Part shown: in pieces, positions 1,479 to 49,981 of the stretch
Position numbering within the stretch: position 1 is the first letter of the stretch
Layout: each line of letters starts with the position of its first letter
The notes under the pieces: generated by a model
What the model saw: the letters and a program-made list of their open reading frames with translations, nothing else
Told to the model about the DNA's origin: nothing
The model's database searches: none
Translations under genes and position numbers: made by a program
NCBI RefSeq assembly: GCF_006345805.1
Contig: NW_021834252.1
Span: 1 to 49,981, forward strand
Length of the DNA stretch: 49,981 nt
Direction: 5' to 3'
DNA from: Octopus sinensis
Lineage: Eukaryota

Positions 1479-1652
1479 ATTTCAAATTTTGGCACAAGGC
1501 CAACAATTAAATCGATCCCAGTGTTCAACTGGTACTTATTTTGTTGACCCCGAAAGGAAGGAAAGCAAAGTCGACTCCGTCGGTATTCGAACACAGAACG
1601 TGAAGCCGGAGCAAAGCATTTTTCCCGACGTGGTAACGATTTTGCCAACCCA
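1479..1652 (-). mobile_element. SINE family A (tail 2a), diverged with internal deletion
   Basis: tttcaaattttggcacaaggcc...aactggtacttattttgttgaccccgaaagga...aaagtcgac...ggtaacgattttgcca is the reverse complement of the family A layout. Confidence 0.8.
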
Positions 1653-2824
1653 GAGTCTTAATGCTAGAAAATATTATTATTAAAGAGATGTGAATTAGAA
1701 GGATCGTTAGCGCATCGAACATCCTATCTAGGTCAATGTTGCTTTTCATCATTTCCGGGCCAATAATATAAAGTACCAGTAACATATTAGGTGTCTTTTC
1801 TCAACAAAATTTCTGGCTTTATGCGTATGTCAGAAAAAATCTTTACTATTTCTGGAGCGAACGTCAAAATGGCTGCAGATAAACTGTTAACCAGATGTCA
1901 TTGATAAGGTTACTTAATCCCAGGTCTGCTTTGATACGGACAAAGCTATGTTGATAATAGTCAAAAGATCAACTCTTTTTCCTAGAATAAAGGATTTTTA
2001 ATGTGTCCTATTTTTATTTTTTAGATTTTAGTAAAATTTAAGGGAAATTCCGTTGCTATTTCTAGCAGGTCGAGTGACAGTGCAAAGGATATCTAATAGG
2101 CTCATACTGAAGTAGTTATTTAGTGAAGAAGACGGTGGTGTGAAAAAAATGATCGGGAAATTTAGTCTAAATCAAAATGAAAGTTACAGCTGGTATCAGT
2201 TCGCTCCCTGTACGCTCCCTTCATTTGCATAAAGATGAATGCAACTGAGATAGGTTTTGGAAACGGCTTCTTTGCATTTGTCAAAGATGAGTTAATTTTA
2301 ATTCCGTTAAAGGTACGTATCCTGACGCACAGATTGGTATCTACTCCGACGTAGAATTTGGATGTGTACGGTGGATGTTGTCTAGAAAGAATATTAAGAA
2401 AGATGTGAGAAGCGTGTGATTGGCTGATATTTTATACTTAGTATTGAATAGACATTTGAACTAATTATAAAGGGGAATAGTTAATTGCTTAGTCTAACAT
2501 ACTGGACTCATTTTCTTCTTCGGTGAAAAATAATTGTTATATTTTGTGAACTTTTTTCTGATAATTGATGACGCAGAATCTTATCAGCTGCCATGGTGAC
2601 AACAATATTCCTTATAAATAGCTATATGCAATTGATGGGATTCTCTGACGAATTCAGCGATGGACAATCAGTTGTTCTTCGTTGAACGAACGCTCGTCGC
2701 CTTAAACTAACGTGTAGGTGGCTGCGTACTTTACATATACATACACTCTTTACGCAGTTCCAAAACCGAATTAGCGCGACTTCAGAAGTCTCAAAGATTT
2801 TGAATTACGAAGCATTCGAGGGTT

Positions 2825-2985
2825 TTTTCTACACAGTTTCTGTCCCCCCAATTCTACTCACAAATCTTGACTCGAGCCGAGGTTTATGGTAAACATTCTT
2901 GTCCAACGTACCATGTAATAAAACAGAACTTGTGATCTTACGATTGTGAAGCGAATTTCTTAACTACTCAGTCATGTATGAGTAT
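2825..2985 (-). mobile_element. Decayed head half of SINE family B
   Basis: cagtttctgtc...aattctactcacaaatcttgactcgagccgagg...cttgtccaacgtaccatg resembles 13790-13930. Confidence 0.55.
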
Positions 2986-4424
2986 TTTAATCTTCGGATT
3001 AACTCATTGATTTGTGAATTGAACTGATTAGAGTTTGAGTGCTGCTCAGTATGAGGAGAAATGTTAGCAGTTGTGATATTTTAGCGGTCTTGAGTATGAA
3101 TATAGATTGGTATTCCAGAATATCAGAGTGCAGCCAGTCCACGGTGGTGGGAGTGAATGAATAGAGGGCTTTCATACATACGGCGGAGAGTTATACAAGT
3201 GGCGAGAAGAGATATAAAAGCTGTTGAGGAATCGTATGATTGGCTGAATGCCTTTTATGTAATATGGTAATATATGGAGAAGTGAAATAATTACGAAATG
3301 GAGGTGAGCAAATAGTTTTACATGCAGCACAACGCTACATGTATTATGAATGCGATTTCTTATTGATCTCACTTAAGCTGAAGGATCTATATTTATTTTC
3401 ATTTGCTTAATAAAGGAATTTACAGTAAAATTAGTTGTCCTTATATCGCCAGGTGGGTATCAGATACTATATTTTGATTGGCTTGTATTCTAGCCAATGG
3501 GAGATTTCACTCCTACTCATTATAGATAGTATATTAAATAAACTGAATATACACATCAATCATGTGACTCCGCATCTTCAGTGTAGAAGACAAAAATATC
3601 TCGAACGCCTTGACCACTTAAGTCATGTTCGGCAAAGTGGTCAATATTAACCACTGGGGTCTATAAAAACGTGAAAGTTTTTAAGCATTAAGGGTGCTTA
3701 TGTATTAGCGAATTAAGCATGGAAGAGCATGGTCATTTAAGGCTGAGGTGTACCAAATACCGCTGCAGTAACTAGTTTTCACTAAATACATATTTCTCTT
3801 TAAATATTTCCATTATATCAATATAATATAACTGAATTGTTCTATATCAATTTTATTAAGTATTTTCACTAGATTTCTTCAGATATTTCTTGTAGAAAAA
3901 GTGGAAATTACACAAAAGAACGAGCTTATCTTTATTAAATCAAGAAATTTTTTTATTAAGTATACCTTTTAGTTATATTTTGAAATTTACATGACGGAGG
4001 TCGATAGATTATCAAAGATTTCATAATGGTTTCAATGATAAAAGAATTTTACCTGCTCTTGACGTACATATTTGATTCTTTGCGAAGGTCCAGTTGTTGA
4101 TAGTAACAGGAAATATTTATTATCAGCATGGAATGAATGGTCTACATAATTTCTTATTTGATTAGTTCTGGGGGTACCACCGCAACTCCGAGTTTTTATC
4201 TTCTCATATATGGGTGAAAATGGAACCGAGAAGCGACAAGGAAGAGCCTCAGTTTAGAATGAATGATTTTTACTCCTACTAAATATTCTCTAATGCTTAG
4301 TCTCTGCAGTGAATTCAAACTCACAAACACAAACACATACAACGACGCACACCCCCACCGGCCTATTTATATATATATATACATGAAACAAATAGACACA
4401 CACATACTATAAGGATAAAAAGAG

Positions 4425-4490
4425 TTTCAAATTCTGGCACAGGACTAGCAATTTCGGGAGAGGGGCTAAGTCGATTACATCGAACCCAGT
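4425..4490 (-). mobile_element. SINE A 3' half (tail 2a)
   Basis: tttcaaattctggcacaaggactagcaatttcgggagaggggctaagtcgattacatcgaacccagt. Confidence 0.8.
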
Positions 4491-4507
4491 TGTTGGCTTT
4501 TTCCTTG

Positions 4508-4613
4508 TTTAGGGGTGATTACTTAAGTACCAATGAAACACTTGGCTCGATGTAATCGACTAGTCACCTCACCCCTCAAAAAAATTCAGGCCTTGTGCCT
4601 ATAGTAGAAAGAA
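4508..4613 (+). mobile_element. SINE A 3' half (tail 2b) followed by an ATT tract
   Basis: ttaagtaccaatgaaacacttggctcgatgtaatcgactag...ttcaggccttgtgcctatagtagaaaga then (ATT)n. Confidence 0.8.
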
Positions 4614-4660
4614 TTATTATTATTATTAATATTATTATTATCATTATTGCTATTATTATT

Positions 4661-4692
<32 letters not shown>

Positions 4693-4725
4693 TCATCATC
4701 ATTATTATTATTATTATTATTATTA

Positions 4726-4762
<37 letters not shown>
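4614..4762. repeat. Compound (ATT)n/(ATC)n microsatellite
   Basis: Directly visible trinucleotide runs. Confidence 0.95.
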
Positions 4763-4764
<2 letters not shown>

Positions 4765-5213
4765 GGCACCAAGTTGGCAGAGTCGCTAGTATCCCGGGTA
4801 AAATGCTTAGCGGTATTTCGCTGGCAGAACTGTTAGCACGCCGGGCGAAATGCTAAGCGGTATTTCGTCTGCGTTACGTTGTGAGTTCAAATTCCGCCGA
4901 GGTCGACTTTGCCTTTCATCCTTTCGGGGTCGATAAATTAAGTACCAGTTACGCATTGGAGTCGATGTAATCGATTTAATACCTATGTCTGTCCTTGTTT
5001 GTCCCCTCTGTGTTTAGCCCCTTGTGGGTAATAAAGAAATAGGTATTTCGCCCGTCGCTACGTCTACGTGCTGAGTTCAAATTCCGCCGAGGTCGACTTT
5101 GCCTTTCATCCTTTCGGGGTCAATAAATTAAGTACTAGTGAAACACTGTGGTCGATTTAATCGACTAGTTCCCTCCCCCAAAATTCCAAGGCCTTGTGCT
5201 TTCGGTAGAAAAG

Positions 5214-5259
<46 letters not shown>
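4763..5259 (+). mobile_element. SINE A host copy (tail 2b plus ATT tail), interrupted at GGTATTTCGC
   Basis: Head at 4763-4821. The element resumes at 5042 with the B box (gagttcaaattcc), core and tail, then (ATT)n at 5214-5259. Confidence 0.85.
4822..5041 (+). mobile_element. Young SINE A (tail 1) nested in another SINE A with a 10-bp TSD
   Basis: A box tggcagaactgttagc, B box gagttcaaattcc, tail ...ccccttgtgggtaataaagaaata. GGTATTTCGC is present at 4812-4821 and 5042-5051. Confidence 0.9.
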
Positions 5260-5260
<1 letters not shown>

Positions 5261-7730: not shown

Positions 7731-7735
<5 letters not shown>

Positions 7736-7963
7736 CTTCATTGCCCACAAGGGGCTAAACATAGAGGGGACAAACAAGGACATACAAACGAATTAAGTCG
7801 ATTACATCGACCCCAGTGCGAAACTGGTACTTTATTTATCGACCCCGAAAGGATGAAAGGCAAAGTCGACCTCGGCGGAATTTGAACTCAGAACGTAACG
7901 GCAGACGAAATATCGCTAAGAATTTCGCCCGGCGTGCTAACGTTTCTGCCAGCTCGCCGCCTT
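7731..7963 (-). mobile_element. Full-length young SINE A (tail 1) monomer between microsatellites
   Basis: Minus strand reads aaggcggcgagctggcagaaacgttagc...gagttcaaattcc...ccccttgtgggcaatgaagaaa and runs into (TA)n. Confidence 0.92.
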
Positions 7964-14807: not shown

Positions 14808-14985
14808 TATGCTTAACGATATTTCGTCCGTCTTCACGTTCTGAGTTCAAATACCGCCGAGTCAACTTTGCCTTTCAACCTTTGTTGATCGATGAAATGA
14901 GTACCAGTTGTGCACTGGGATAAATGTAATCGACTGAGCTCCACCCTCAAAATTTCTGACCTTGTGCCAAAGTTTGAAATCAACA
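14808..14985 (+). mobile_element. SINE A (tail 2a), head partly lost
   Basis: atttcgtccgtcttcacgttctgagttcaaatacc...gagtaccagttgtgcactggg...ccttgtgccaaagtttgaaa. Confidence 0.8.
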
Positions 14986-23429: not shown

Positions 23430-23799
23430 TATTTTAGCACCAATTTCGGAGAAGAGGGTGACTCGATTAGACCAAACCCTATGATTGACTAGTACTTATT
23501 TAATCGTCTCTGACAGGATGAAAGACAGAGTCTACCTCGGCGGAATTTGAACGAGGGACGTTGAAGACGGGCGTAATGCCTATTTCTTTACTACCCACAG
23601 AGAGGACAAACAAGGACAGACAAACGGATTAAGTAGATTATATCGACCCCAGAGCGTAACTGGTACTTATTTAACCAACCCCGAAAGGTTGAAAGGCAAA
23701 GTCTGCTACGGCGGAATTTGAACTCAGAACATAAAGACAGACGAAATGCCGCTAAGCATTTCGTCCAGCGTGCTAACGTTTCTGCCAGCTTGCTGCTTT
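23430..23799 (-). mobile_element. SINE A dimer: tail-1 unit (23581-23799) joined to the B-box half of a tail-2 unit (23430-23580)
   Basis: Minus-strand junction ...gtagtaaagaaata|ggcattacgcccgtc... is at the same position as in 5041/5042. Confidence 0.85.
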
Positions 23800-23922: not shown

Positions 23923-24270
23923 AAGGCGGCGAGATGGCAGAAACGTTAGCACACCGGGTGAAATGCGTCTGCCATTACGTTCTGAGTTCAAATTCCGCCG
24001 AGGTCGACTTTGCCTTTCATCCTTTCGGGGTCGATAAAGTAAGTACCAGTTACACACTGGGGTCGATGTAATCGACTTGATCCGTTTGTCTGTCCTTGTT
24101 TGTCCCCTCTGTGTTTAGCCCCTTGTGGGTAGTAAAGAAATAGGTATTCCGTCTGCCGCTATGTTCTGAGTTCAAATTCTGCCGAGGTCGACTTTGCCTT
24201 TTATCCTTTCGGGGTCGACCAATGCTTTGTGAGTGAGTTTGGTAGATGGAAGCTGAAAGAAACACGTGGT
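23923..24270 (+). mobile_element. Composite SINE: A tail-1 unit (23923-24142), A B-box half (24143-24220), family B central domain (about 24215-24270)
   Basis: ...agtaaagaaata|ggtattccgtctgcc...atcctttcggggtcgacc|aatgctttgtgagtgagtttggtagatggaagctgaaagaa. Confidence 0.88.
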
Positions 24271-42137: not shown

Positions 42138-42347
42138 GGTTTCAAATTTTGACACAAGGCTAGCAATTTCGGGGGAGGGTTAAGTCCATTACATTGACCC
42201 CGGCGCTCGATTGGTACTTATTTTATCGACCCTGAAAGGATGAAAGATAAAGTCAACCTTGGCTGAATTTGAACTCATGACAAAGATGGACGAAACGCGC
42301 TAAGCATTTTGCCCGGTGTGCTAACGATCCTCCCAGCTCGCACCCTA
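42138..42347 (-). mobile_element. SINE A (tail 2a)
   Basis: ggtttcaaattttgacacaaggctagcaatttcgg...ggtacttattttatcgaccc...aatttgaactc...gtgctaacgatcctcccagctcg. Confidence 0.88.
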
Positions 42348-48484: not shown

Positions 48485-48708
48485 TGGACTGGCTGGGTGA
48501 CTTACATTCACCTCTGGCAGGTGGGTGATGTTGAACATGCCTCAAATGGCGAAGCACCCGTTGCCCATCACACCCAAATGGGATTTAAGGTAAGTTATCT
48601 TGCGTGTCCACCACCCAGGTGTTTCTAACACCCAGCGCTTTGAGAGTGTATATACTCCCCCACGCTATTGCATCCACGGAAAAATACATTAAGTATATGT
48701 AGTTAATG

Positions 48709-48756
<48 letters not shown>
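48485..48756 (+). repeat. Unclassified interspersed repeat F, copy 2, with (TAA)n tract
   Basis: Homologous to 43405-43640; (TAA)n at about 48705-48756. Confidence 0.7.
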
Positions 48757-48761
48757 TATAG

Positions 48762-49815
48762 ATAAGTTTCTTTATTGGCCACACAGGGCTGCACACAGAT
48801 GGGACAAGTTACAAGGTAGAGCTTTTCTTTTGGGGATAGAAGAACAAAAAACCAAAGAAAAAAAAAAAAGGGGGTGGCGTAGGTTTTCGATCAAGAGGGA
48901 TCGTAAAAGGGAAGAAAAGAACAAAAACAAAAAAAACAAAAAAAATTGAATAAAATATAAAAAGAATAAAAAGAAAAAAGAAAAGGAAAAGGAAACAAAA
49001 GGAAAGAGAAATGAAAAAAGAAGAAAAAAATGGGAAAAAATAGGAAGAGGAAAAAAAAAGAACGATCAATAGGGATCGTGTATCACAGTGTTATGATATA
49101 TGGTGTAAAGGGGAAAGCAAGTAAGGTTTATCCGTGGAAGAAAAGCCTACGAAAAAGACCACGGTAACCTTGGTCATACTTGTTATATGTTACCACATTG
49201 TTTGCAAGTGGGTAACCCTCTGTTTTCAATTTCTGGCGTTCATAGGATTATGCTCAAGGTGGCTTCGTCATTCATACGTGCCATCCTTGCTACATTCACC
49301 CACAAAATTTTTTAAAACATTCGCTAGACAAAAACTTGCCTCTCTACTCTCACTTTCCTTTTCAAGTGGTACTTGAAGAAGTTGATGAGAGATTGACCAG
49401 AGAGGAAAGTGTTTGTCTCCAATCTTTCAGACGCGTCCACCAGATACATTCTTTCGCCATAGCCACAAGGATGATGAAAATAGCTCTTCCTTCCCGTTTG
49501 AAGGAAGGAGGCGTGACAATATTGACGATAGACTCAGCTGATAAACCGACTCGTCCCACACGTGACAGAAATTGTCGACATAAGCCCACAGGTCGGAAAT
49601 TGTTGGACACTGCACGAGTGCGTGCAGAACGGTTCGTCGCTCTGACCGCATCTCGGGCAGGTCGGCCCCGTGTTTCTCGAGCCGTGTCTGTAGAGCTTAT
49701 CCGGAACGGGTAGCGCTTCTCGGTAGCACTGCCAGGCCAGGGATCTCTGGAAGTTGTCCATGGGCCCTGGCCCGAAAGTCGTCCTGAACAGGCGGGTCAG
49801 GTACTCCTCGTCGAC
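48762..49815 (-). mobile_element. 5'-truncated L1-clade (Tx1-like) LINE: ORF2 C-terminus (zf-RVT) and 3' UTR
   Basis: FQRSLAWQCYREALPVPDKL...CPRCGQSDE(T)VLHALVQC...AMAKECIWWTRL with frameshifts; probable stop at 49240-49242; T-rich 3' UTR; AATAAA at 48776-48771. The Tx1 subclade assignment is an inference. Confidence 0.8.
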
Positions 49816-49981
49816 GTTTCCAGTTAAAACGTTTCCAGTTAAAACATTTCCCAAGAATAGTCAGTCCGAGGGGTTTTGTCTGTACTAAGCCAAACATGTT
49901 TTGGGAGAGTAGTGAGGCAGAAAGGGGAAGAGGGAGAGATAGAGATATATACATATATGCATATATATATAAGAGAGAGAT

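What the first reader, a model, noticed from the sequence alone, without database searches (positions are those of the whole stretch)
48767..48807. SINE A tail 1 matches the 3' terminus of the L1/Tx1-type LINE in the same window
Seen: the LINE end (minus strand) TTGTCCCATCTGTGTGCAGCCCTGTGTGGCCAATAAAGAAA aligns without gaps to the SINE tail at 4999-5039, TTGTCCCCTCTGTGTTTAGCCCCTTGTGGGTAATAAAGAAA, at 34/41 identities. Both lie at the extreme 3' ends, and a further ccttg match sits upstream. Established: SINEs often borrow a partner LINE's 3' tail for RT recognition, mostly in the L2/CR1/RTE clades; this is less commonly seen for L1-clade elements. Inference: this LINE mobilises the tail-1 subfamily, and family A has swapped partner LINEs (tails 1, 2a, 2b).
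Basis: partly seen in the sequence, partly recalled or inferred. Interest (0 to 1): 0.8.

Follow-up and report, generated by a model that had tools for sequence, protein, structure and literature searches.

The report
SINE borrows Tx1-like LINE tail
In this octopus-like genome, one subfamily of a short mobile element ends in the same roughly 45-base sequence as a Tx1-like long mobile element, which makes that long element its most likely copying partner; such pairings are well known, but they are rare for this branch of elements.

Summary
The LINE 3' end (48807..48767, minus strand) matches SINE tail 1 (4999-5039) at 34/41 ungapped, or 40/50 with one 3-nt gap. In the rest of the window only the three full tail-1 copies score 26/41 or more; 1000 shuffled queries peak at 27.

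The motif belongs to the LINE. Five related LINE copies from public contigs carry the same box at their 3' termini, 240-560 nt past the ORF2 stop. One of them is an apparently intact 5.2-kb element (L023). A profile built only from those five external ends finds the three tail-1 SINE ends as its top window hits (E about 1e-7).

The LINE has an endonuclease, a reverse transcriptase and a zf-RVT domain, and it scores closer to Xenopus Tx1 (346 bits) than to human L1 (194 bits).

Trans-mobilisation is inferred, not shown. The claim that family A "swapped partner LINEs" is not supported: tails 1, 2a and 2b all share the frame CCTTGTG-N9-GAAA, and tail 2b ends in (ATT)n, as the LINE does.

Three of the four tail-1 copies sit at one identical site inside older family-A SINE heads. 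One has a 10-bp target-site duplication, which hints at Tx1-style site preference.

Verdict: a new member of a known kind, of moderate interest.

The parts
48767..48816 (-). 3'-terminal box of the LINE (CCTTGTAAC + TTGTCCCATCTGTGTGCAGCCCTGTGTGGCCAATAAAGAAA). This is the segment shared with SINE tail 1.
   Evidence: 34/41 ungapped and 40/50 gapped against SINE tail 1. The same box ends five external LINE copies. Hit by the external-LINE-only HMM at E 5.5e-4.
48704..48766 (-). Spacer CTTATCTAT followed by the LINE's (ATT)n-type terminal repeat array.
   Evidence: Sequence; array. L003 and L023 also end ...GAAATC(ATT)n.
48817..49239 (-). Rest of the LINE 3'UTR. It includes a 158-nt T/C-rich block (48905-49062) bracketed by 17-nt direct repeats at 49079-49063 and 48904-48888.
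   Evidence: ORF2 stop placed at 49242-49240 by homology with the end of L023 ORF2. Block composition T116 C29 A9 G4.
49240..49900 (-). 5'-truncated, frameshifted C-terminal remnant of LINE ORF2 with its CCHC zinc-binding domain. The upstream limit is approximate.
   Evidence: Pfam zf-RVT PF13966, E 4e-8. 70% aa identity to intact ORF2 P0169/L023. 74.9% nt identity over 553 nt to L023. Homology traceable to about 49870-49900.
4822..5041 (+). Tail-1 SINE copy, 5'-truncated by about 10 nt and nested in an older family-A SINE.
   Evidence: The 10-bp TSD GGTATTTCGC lies at 4812-4821 and 5042-5051.
4763..4821 (+). Head of the older (outer) family-A SINE that received the tail-1 insertion. It begins directly after a 150-nt (ATT)n array.
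5042..5260 (+). Remainder of the outer SINE, with tail 2b (...GGCCTTGTGCTTTCGGTAGAAAAG) and its (ATT)15 terminal repeat.
7731..7961 (-). Free-standing full-length tail-1 SINE copy ending GAAGAAATA followed by (TA)n.
   Evidence: Its tail scores 33/41 against the LINE. Top hit of the external-LINE HMM, E 1.1e-7.
23925..24142 (+). Tail-1 SINE unit followed at 24143 by GGTATTCCG..., the rest of another family-A SINE. The 3' junction is the same as at 5041/5042. A 13-nt gap lies at the homologous head position (about 23965/23966).
   Evidence: Tail scores 33/41. HMM E 5e-7.
23581..23797 (-). Tail-1 SINE unit with a 14-nt deletion in the tail, followed (23580 downward) by GGCATTACG..., the rest of another family-A SINE at the same junction.
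   Evidence: The whole composite is flanked by AATATTCACAA(GG/AA)ATTAA.

Best explanation
The match reflects common descent. A Tx1-like LINE family of octopods (L1 superclade: ORF1 with a CCHC knuckle; ORF2 with AP-endonuclease, RT and zf-RVT) ends in a conserved 45-50-nt box, ...TTGTCCC.TCTGTG...CCCTTGTGG..AATAAAGAAA. This box often precedes an (ATT)n repeat.

A young subfamily of the family-A SINE replaced the last ~60 nt of its body with a copy of this box ('tail 1'). Family A has pol III box-like motifs in its head and a CORE-like body.

The most likely function follows the 'stringent' LINE model. The LINE's ORF2 protein recognises the box on its own RNA to start target-primed reverse transcription, and SINE RNAs carrying the box are copied in trans.

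Shown: homology of the tails, their terminal position in both elements, conservation of the box across diverged LINE lineages, and a standard target-site duplication on a tail-1 SINE.

Inferred: the direction of capture (LINE to SINE), recognition of the box by the RT, and trans-mobilisation.
For: 1. 34/41 ungapped and 40/50 gapped identity. No other window position reaches 26/41, and 1000 shuffles peak at 27.
2. The same box sits at the 3' terminus of five further LINE copies from independent public contigs, 240-560 nt after the ORF2 stop: L003, L011/12, L013-16, L017 and L023. L023 looks like an intact full-length element, with ORF1 of 475 aa and ORF2 of 1140 aa.
3. The tail-1 consensus is 71-83% identical to each of the six LINE ends, and 0 of 500 shuffles reach any of the six scores.
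4. An HMM built from the five external LINE ends only ranks the three full tail-1 SINE ends first in the whole window (E 1e-7 to 5e-7), above the window's own LINE end.
5. Tail 1 is confined to one subfamily of a SINE whose other copies carry tail 2, whereas the box is general in the LINE family. This argues for transfer from LINE to SINE.
6. The SINE at 4822-5041 has a 10-bp TSD directly after the box, so the box is the functional 3' end of a retrotransposed unit.
7. Tail-1 copies are young: three of the four have 0 mismatches in the 39-nt core, against 5-9 for tail-2a copies. L1-Tx1 LINEs are reported as recently active in Octopus vulgaris, with a joint SINE and LINE burst (PMC13282606).
8. 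A contig from the same source as several LINE copies also carries a family-A SINE head, so the two families co-occur outside this genome (L017).
Against: - No functional data exist.
- The window has only one LINE copy, and it is dead, so overlap of activity periods could not be measured.
- Tail-1 SINEs lack the (ATT)n repeat that follows the box in three LINE copies, whereas tail-2b SINEs have it. In classical stringent pairs the terminal repeats are shared as well.
- No convincing conserved stem-loop was found. There is only a 3-4-bp CCC-N5-GGG hairpin, and fold energies do not differ from shuffles.
- Three of the four tail-1 copies lie inside composites. If such composites are copied as units, tail 1 would be a passenger and the outer tail would drive mobility.
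- The external LINE copies come from unidentified samples (Logan SRR118693xx, JGI 3300045642), presumably other octopods, not from this genome.
Confidence: 0.75

Rival explanations
1. Tail 1 is a relic. The tail-1 unit now spreads mainly as part of a composite (tail-1 SINE plus the 3' part of a second SINE). That composite would be transcribed from the first unit's promoter and mobilised through the outer tail 2 and its (ATT)n repeat, so the LINE-like box is no longer what the RT uses.
For: Three of the four tail-1 copies share exactly the same junction...AAAGAAATA|GG(T/C)ATT.CG. One composite ends in tail 2b plus (ATT)15, the LINE's own terminal repeat. The composite at 23797-~23430 is flanked as a whole by an 18-nt near-repeat. 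Tail-1 ends carry no (ATT)n.
Against: - The copy at 4822-5041 has its own 10-bp TSD and a 5'-truncated start inside an outer head, which a composite master does not explain.
- The outer units differ in type (CGCCCGTC versus CGTCTGCC) and in their tails.
- The copy at 7961-7731 is free-standing.
- An outer element's own TSD would flank any nested pair anyway.
Confidence: 0.15
2. The LINE family captured its terminal box from the SINE (SINE to LINE), or both acquired it from a third repeat.
For: Sequence similarity alone has no direction. All family-A tails share the frame CCTTGTG-N9-GAAA, so some form of the box could be old in the SINE.
Against: The box is present in LINE lineages whose ORF2 C-termini are only about 50-70% identical, always at the same place. 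In the SINE the extended box is confined to one young subfamily. In the window and in 40 kb of loci the box was found only at these LINE or SINE 3' ends.
Confidence: 0.05
3. The window's 'LINE end' is a stray 5'-truncated tail-1 SINE fragment that happens to abut a LINE lacking its real end, or the similarity is chance.
For: SINE fragments are dense here, with about 15 family-A pieces in 50 kb. BLAST with short-query scoring gives only E about 0.05 for the pair.
Against: Shuffle tests exclude chance. Five other LINE copies end in the same box at the same distance from ORF2. The window LINE's box is more diverged from tail 1 (34/41) than the other two complete tail-1 copies are from it (about 39/41).
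Confidence: 0.03

Closest known systems
Stringent-type SINE/LINE pairs with a shared 3' tail (UnaSINE1/UnaL2 of eel, Kajikawa & Okada 2002; 58 pairs surveyed in PMC3472496; bivalve CORE/V/Meta SINEs with RTE, CR1, CR1-Zenon and Nimb partners, 35-61 bp shared, PMC11481361)
   Same: A tRNA-type SINE carries a 40-60-nt copy of the 3' end of a LINE's 3'UTR at its own 3' terminus. The box is conserved among LINE lineages, and only the SINE tail is replaced on a constant head and body ('mosaic' evolution).
   Different: The partner here belongs to the L1/Tx1 group, not to L2, CR1, RTE or I. No clear conserved stem-loop was found. The terminal microsatellite is not shared by the tail-1 SINE. No mobilisation assay exists.
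L1-clade LINEs with stringent tails: maize/sorghum LINE1-1_ZM with ZmSINE2/3, and Chlamydomonas L1-1_CR with SINEX-3_CR (PMC3472496, PMC3747384)
   Same: [quoted passage not shown]
   Different: Those cases are in plants and a green alga, the elements end in poly(A), and the maize lineage has a well-supported stem-loop. This case is an animal (cephalopod) Tx1-like element that often ends in (ATT)n.
Tx1-Mar LINEs and SINEU of crocodilians (PMC4494074)
   Same: A Tx1-clade LINE is proposed to mobilise a SINE. Tx1-group elements typically prefer specific target sequences inside other repeats, which resembles the recurrent insertion of tail-1 SINEs at one site of family-A SINE heads.
   Different: The SINEU link rests on shared target preference and shared 5' heads; no LINE with a similar 3' half was found. 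Here the link rests on the 3' tail, and a shared target preference with the LINE is not shown.
Octopus CORE-SINE OR1 (Ohshima & Okada 1994, cited in PMC4824008)
   Same: An octopus SINE with a tRNA-type head and a CORE-like central domain. Family A has a B-box-like GAGTTCAAATTCC and a body that resembles the 3' part of the CORE domain (resemblance recalled from memory).
   Different: Identity with OR1 could not be checked because no reference sequence was available. ARAGORN and Rfam do not call a tRNA in the head.

Membership tests
SINE/LINE pair with shared 3' tail (stringent type) | The SINE 3' end is homologous to the 3' end of the LINE 3'UTR. | tested here: met
   34/41 ungapped and 40/50 gapped. 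71-83% identity to six LINE ends, with 0 of 500 shuffles reaching any score. The external-LINE-only HMM hits the SINE ends at E about 1e-7.
SINE/LINE pair with shared 3' tail (stringent type) | The shared segment is terminal in both elements. | tested here: met
   In the SINE the box is followed directly by the 10-bp TSD. In the LINE it is followed by (ATT)n, (A)12 or flank in the window copy, L003, L011, L017 and L023.
SINE/LINE pair with shared 3' tail (stringent type) | The tail is conserved among diverged members of the LINE family. | tested here: met
   Six copies whose ORF2 C-termini are about 50-70% identical keep the box.
SINE/LINE pair with shared 3' tail (stringent type) | A conserved stem-loop lies in the shared tail. 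| tested here: inconclusive
   Only a 4-pair CCC-N5-GGG hairpin emerges from RNAalifold. Single-sequence z-scores range from -0.7 to +1.7.
SINE/LINE pair with shared 3' tail (stringent type) | SINE and LINE carry the same terminal repeats. | tested here: not met
   (ATT)n follows the box in three LINE copies but in none of the four tail-1 SINE copies. It does follow tail-2b SINE copies.
SINE/LINE pair with shared 3' tail (stringent type) | The two families were active at the same time. | not tested
   There is one LINE copy in the window and no genome-wide data. The literature reports only a joint SINE and LINE burst and active L1-Tx1 families in O. vulgaris (PMC13282606).
SINE/LINE pair with shared 3' tail (stringent type) | Trans-mobilisation depends on the tail. 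| not testable with these tools
   This needs a retrotransposition assay.
Tx1 clade / L1 superclade of non-LTR retrotransposons | ORF2 has an AP-type endonuclease, an RT and a C-terminal Cys-His domain. | tested here: met
   Exo_endo_phos + RVT_1 + zf-RVT in P0176, P0169 (L023), P0135 and P0164. The window fragment keeps only zf-RVT. The best solved structure is human L1 ORF2p, E 2e-56 over residues 7-858.
Tx1 clade / L1 superclade of non-LTR retrotransposons | The RT groups with Tx1, not with L1 proper or other clades. | tested here: inconclusive
   Bit scores: L023-Tx1 346, Tx1-human L1 263, L023-human L1 194, plant L1-like 131, R2 81. These favour Tx1, but no phylogeny with a full clade reference set (RTclass1) was possible.
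Tx1 clade / L1 superclade of non-LTR retrotransposons | Insertion is target-specific. | tested here: inconclusive
   Three of the four tail-1 SINEs share one insertion site in SINE heads. The LINE 3' flanks are (ATT)n x3, an unrelated sequence, and a SINE head at a different position.
tRNA-derived CORE-SINE | [quoted passage not shown] | tested here: inconclusive
   ARAGORN and Rfam give no tRNA hit. A B-box-like GAGTTCAAATTCC is invariant in the copies.
tRNA-derived CORE-SINE | A CORE central domain is present. | not tested
The resemblance to the MIR/OR1 core is recalled from memory only.

The most novel reading that the evidence does not exclude
The tail-1 SINE, and by implication the Tx1-like machinery that copies it, inserts site-specifically into the head of its own SINE family. 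The site is ...GCTTAGC^GGTATTTCG..., and homology between insert and target seals the 5' junction. On this reading a SINE inherits both the 3' tail and the target specificity of a Tx1-type LINE, and builds nested 'dimers' at a fixed position.
Probability: 0.3. Interest if true: 0.7.

Novelty: new member of a known kind. Interest (0 to 1): 0.45.

Why it matters
SINE/LINE partnerships show which autonomous element drives SINE bursts. SINEs make up about 12% of octopus genomes (PMC13282606), and most octopus SINEs are still 'unclassified', with no partner named in the papers I could search.

LINEs of the L1/Tx1 group were long thought to recognise templates loosely, because only 3 of 58 known pairs involve them (PMC3472496). 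An animal Tx1-like LINE with a conserved terminal box that a SINE has copied adds a case of sequence-specific template recognition in this group.

It also gives a concrete, testable 45-50-nt candidate recognition element. An apparently intact partner (L023) is available for the assay.

Tried and rejected
1. Chance match or stray SINE fragment: rejected (and the external LINE ends).
2. Tail 2 also derived from this LINE tail: local alignments of a tail-2a consensus against the six LINE ends are not above shuffles (2-251 of 500 shuffles reach the score), and the LINE-end HMM does not hit tail 2. Only the short frame CCTTGTG-N9-GAAA and the (ATT)n repeat are shared, so this stays an idea, not a result.
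3. A conserved RNA stem-loop in the tail: no signal beyond a 3-4-bp hairpin.
4. More copies from DNA collections: exact-pattern scans for the tail and the SINE core found nothing in metagenome, viral or prokaryotic genome contigs.
5. The first protein hits (L001, L002) and several Logan contigs stop before the LINE 3' end.
6. TSD of the window LINE: none found, and the 5' junction lies within about 100 nt of the window edge.
7. tRNA origin of the SINE head: ARAGORN and Rfam give no call.
8. Other LINE bodies in the window: the ten ORFs tested (122-193 aa) have no Pfam domain, and tblastn with L023 ORF1 and ORF2 hits only 49270-49824.
9. Identity of the source samples: the accession numbers appear in no searchable paper.
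10. The weak HMM hit at 3670-3644 looks like chance.

Full report
**1. What is at the coordinates**

Read on the minus strand, 48807..48767 is TTGTCCCATCTGTGTGCAGCCCTGTGTGGCCAATAAAGAAA. It is followed by CTTATCTAT and an (ATT)n-type array. 4999-5039 on the plus strand is TTGTCCCCTCTGTGTTTAGCCCCTTGTGGGTAATAAAGAAA. They agree at 34 of 41 positions without gaps. With one 3-nt gap the match runs upstream through CCTTGT to 40/50.

The window is 35.7% G+C and full of microsatellites and copies of one SINE family. Relatives of the LINE occur in Octopus bimaculoides, O. vulgaris and Argonauta hians records. The source is therefore an octopod-like genome, though the species was not determined.

**2. 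Is it more than chance?**

I slid the LINE 41-mer over the rest of the window on both strands.
- Only three positions reach 26/41 or more. They are the three complete tail-1 ends at 4999, 24100 and 7773 (minus), scoring 34, 33 and 33.
- 1000 shuffled versions of the query never exceeded 27.

BLAST's E value of about 0.05 reflects its harsh short-query scoring, not a weak signal.

**3. The LINE**

The window holds a single copy. It is 5'-truncated at about 49870-49900.
- Its ORF2 remnant is frameshifted and retains a zf-RVT domain (PF13966, E 4e-8).
- By homology with an intact relative, the ORF2 stop is at 49242-49240 and the 3'UTR runs to 48767.

Profile searches found hundreds of related ORF2 fragments in public contigs. 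They also found full-length ORF2s with Exo_endo_phos + RVT_1 + zf-RVT, including Argonauta hians GAB1606090.1.

Contig Ga0486131_00478 of JGI sample 3300045642 (L023, 5226 nt) carries what looks like an intact element.
- ORF1 is 475 aa with a CCHC knuckle.
- ORF2 is 1140 aa, and its C-terminus is 70% identical to the window's remnant.
- A ~243-nt 3'UTR follows.

Bit scores place the family with Tx1 inside the L1 superclade:

| Comparison | Bits |
|---|---|
| L023 ORF2 vs Xenopus Tx1 ORF2 (29% identity over 907 aa) | 346 |
| Tx1 vs human L1 ORF2p | 263 |
| L023 ORF2 vs human L1 ORF2p | 194 |
| L023 ORF2 vs R2 | 81 |

This is not a phylogeny. An Octopus vulgaris repeat annotation lists 13 recently active 'L1-Tx1' families (PMC13282606).

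**4. The box belongs to the LINE**

This was the key test. A single window copy could not exclude that a stray SINE fragment abuts the LINE. Five further LINE copies reach their 3' ends on the fetched contigs:
- L003...GTAAACCCTTGTGGTCAATAAGGAAATC(ATT)n
- L011/L012...TTGTCCCCTTCTGTGCTGGTCTCTGGTAGGCAATAAAGAAT
- L013-L016...TCCCGTCTTTGTTTAACCCTTGTGGTTTGAATAAA, cut by the contig end
- L017...CGTCCTCTCTATGTTAACCCTCCTTTGGGCAATGAAAAATT(A)12
- L023 (intact)...ATTGTCCTCAATGTCCTAGGCCCTAGTGGCCAATAAATGAAATC(ATT)n, at least 25 units

All lie 240-560 nt beyond the ORF2 stop.

The tail-1 consensus is 71-83% identical to each of the six LINE ends, and 0 of 500 shuffles reach any of the six alignment scores.

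An HMM built from the five external ends alone, with no window sequence in it, was run over the whole window.
- It ranks the three full tail-1 SINE ends first (E 1.1e-7, 1.4e-7 and 5e-7).
- Next comes the window's own LINE end (E 5.5e-4).
- Then come a chance-level hit (E 0.095) and the deleted fourth tail-1 copy (E 0.12).

**5. The SINE**

About 15 family-A pieces lie in the window. All share the core GAGTTCAAATTCCGCCGAGGTCGACTTTGCCTTTCATCC and a body ending ...GTAATCGACTTAA. After that point they differ:
- tail 1: about 62 nt, 4 copies
- tail 2a: ...GCTGGCCTTGTGCCAAAATTTGAAACC
- tail 2b: ...GGCCTTGTGC.T...GTAGAAA.. + (ATT)n

The match to the LINE begins about 12 nt after the point where tail 1 departs from the other tails. 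This is what capture of roughly 50-60 nt of a LINE end predicts.

Three of the four tail-1 copies have 0 mismatches in the 39-nt core, whereas tail-2a copies have 5-9. Tail 1 is therefore the younger form. Because the box is general in the LINE family but confined to one young SINE subfamily, the direction was LINE to SINE.

**6. The three tails are not unrelated**

The pattern CCTTGTG-N9-GAAA occurs 8 times exactly in the window. All 8 hits are at family-A 3' ends of all three tail types, against 0.92 expected.
- Its only hit in the 23 fetched loci is the LINE end of L003.
- The window LINE fits the pattern with two mismatches.
- The two tail-2b copies end in (ATT)n arrays, the LINE's own terminal repeat.

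Beyond that frame, tail 2 shows no significant similarity to the LINE ends. I therefore do not accept 'swapped partner LINEs'. Successive tail variants tied to one LINE family are at least as likely, but that too is unproven.

**7. Nesting**

- outer SINE head, 4763-4821, ending ...GCTTAGC GGTATTTCGC
- inner tail-1 SINE, 4822-5041, starting at TGGCAGAAC and so 5'-truncated
- GGTATTTCGC again at 5042-5051
- rest of the outer SINE, with tail 2b and (ATT)15

This 10-bp TSD proves that ...AATAAAGAAATA is the real 3' end of a retrotransposed unit.

Two other tail-1 copies (23925-24142 and 23797-23581 minus) have the same 3' junction, ATA|GG(T/C)ATT.CG, but different 5' arrangements. One is seamless and one has a 13-nt gap. 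Their outer units are of different types. About five further such head sites in the window are unoccupied.

Two explanations remain.
- The insertions are independent and favour one site, with the 5' junction sealed by homology between insert and target. This is my preferred reading, and it resembles the site preference of Tx1-group elements (PMC4494074).
- A composite is copied as a unit.

The LINE copies themselves do not show that target. Their 3' flanks are (ATT)n three times, an unrelated sequence once, and a SINE head at another position once.

**8. Mechanism and its weak points**

The best reading is the stringent model: the LINE's ORF2p recognises the terminal box on RNA, starts target-primed reverse transcription, and copies tail-1 SINE RNA in trans.

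Against it:
- There are no functional data.
- No convincing conserved stem-loop was found.
- Tail-1 copies lack the (ATT)n repeat.
- Activity overlap is unmeasured.

LINE subfamilies do differ at their very ends ((ATT)n, (A)n or none), so a subfamily without (ATT)n could be the actual partner.

**9. Comparison and novelty**

Shared-tail SINE/LINE pairs are textbook. They are rare for the L1 superclade: 3 of 58 pairs, all in plants or algae (PMC3472496, PMC3747384). The one proposed Tx1-SINE partnership (crocodilian SINEU) rests on target preference and found no LINE with a similar 3' half (PMC4494074). Bivalve CORE and other SINEs pair with RTE, CR1, CR1-Zenon and Nimb (PMC11481361).

I found no paper that describes a partner LINE for octopus SINEs, although curated repeat libraries may already encode one. 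I file this as a new member of a known kind, with moderate interest. The possible site-specific nesting is the more unusual lead.

Noticed in passing
window 4812-5051; 24134-24151; 23589-23572 (minus): Three of the four tail-1 SINE copies end at one identical junction, AAAGAAATA|GG(T/C)ATT.CG, inside the head of another family-A SINE. One has a 10-bp TSD, GGTATTTCGC. Either the insertions prefer this site or a composite element is being copied.
   Followed up: partly
window 1480-1499, 4591-4610, 5020-5039, 5192-5211, 7733-7752, 14960-14979, 24121-24140, 42140-42159; L003 1574-1593: All family-A tails (1, 2a, 2b) and the LINE end of L003 share the frame CCTTGTG-N9-GAAA. There are 8 exact hits in the window against 0.92 expected.
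   Followed up: yes
window 4500-4763 and 4763-5260: A tail-2b SINE (4500-4612) ends in an (ATT)50 array. The next SINE starts directly at the end of that array and itself ends in (ATT)15. Elements with (ATT)n tails seem to land in (ATT)n arrays. The window has about 12 ATT-type arrays, but most are not next to a recognisable element end.
   Followed up: partly
window 48888-49079 (minus strand): Inside the LINE 3'UTR, a 158-nt T/C-rich block (A/G-rich on the plus strand) is bracketed by 17-nt direct repeats, ACGATCCCT(A/C)TTGATCG. It looks like a later A-rich retro-insertion with a TSD on the opposite strand, or a local expansion. It is absent from the shorter L023 UTR.
   Followed up: no
window 49816-49845 (minus strand): A tandem duplication, GTTTTAACTGGAAAC x2, lies within the decayed ORF2 remnant of the LINE.
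   Followed up: no
L023 1-5226 (JGI 3300045642, Ga0486131_00478): An apparently intact full-length Tx1-like LINE sits in a metagenome contig, presumably host DNA. ORF1 is 16-1443, with an RRM-like N-terminus, the knuckle CYICGGLDHLKFFC and a long low-complexity P/T-rich region. ORF2 is 1489-4911. The element ends in (ATT)n.
   Followed up: partly
L017 2960-3036 (Logan SRR11869384): The LINE end ...GGGCAATGAAAAATT(A)12 is followed directly by a family-A SINE head starting at CATTAGCACGCCGGGCG. LINE and SINE therefore co-occur and abut in another dataset. This LINE copy ends in poly(A), not (ATT)n.
   Followed up: no
P0024 (Logan contig) versus window 49700-49560: P0024 reads ...NTGPSRSRCSQKVTKSFCTHS..., the same out-of-frame continuation (FCTHS) as the window LINE. 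The frameshift therefore seems shared: either a dead subfamily that kept spreading, or the orthologous locus in a related species.
   Followed up: no
P0112 / XP_014776104.1 (Octopus bimaculoides): In an older model of rho guanine nucleotide exchange factor 10-like (1276 aa), the first ~45 residues match the LINE's zf-RVT region. The later version, XP_014776104.2, is 1128 aa. This probably reflects a LINE fragment once annotated as an exon; whether the later version drops it was not checked.
   Followed up: no
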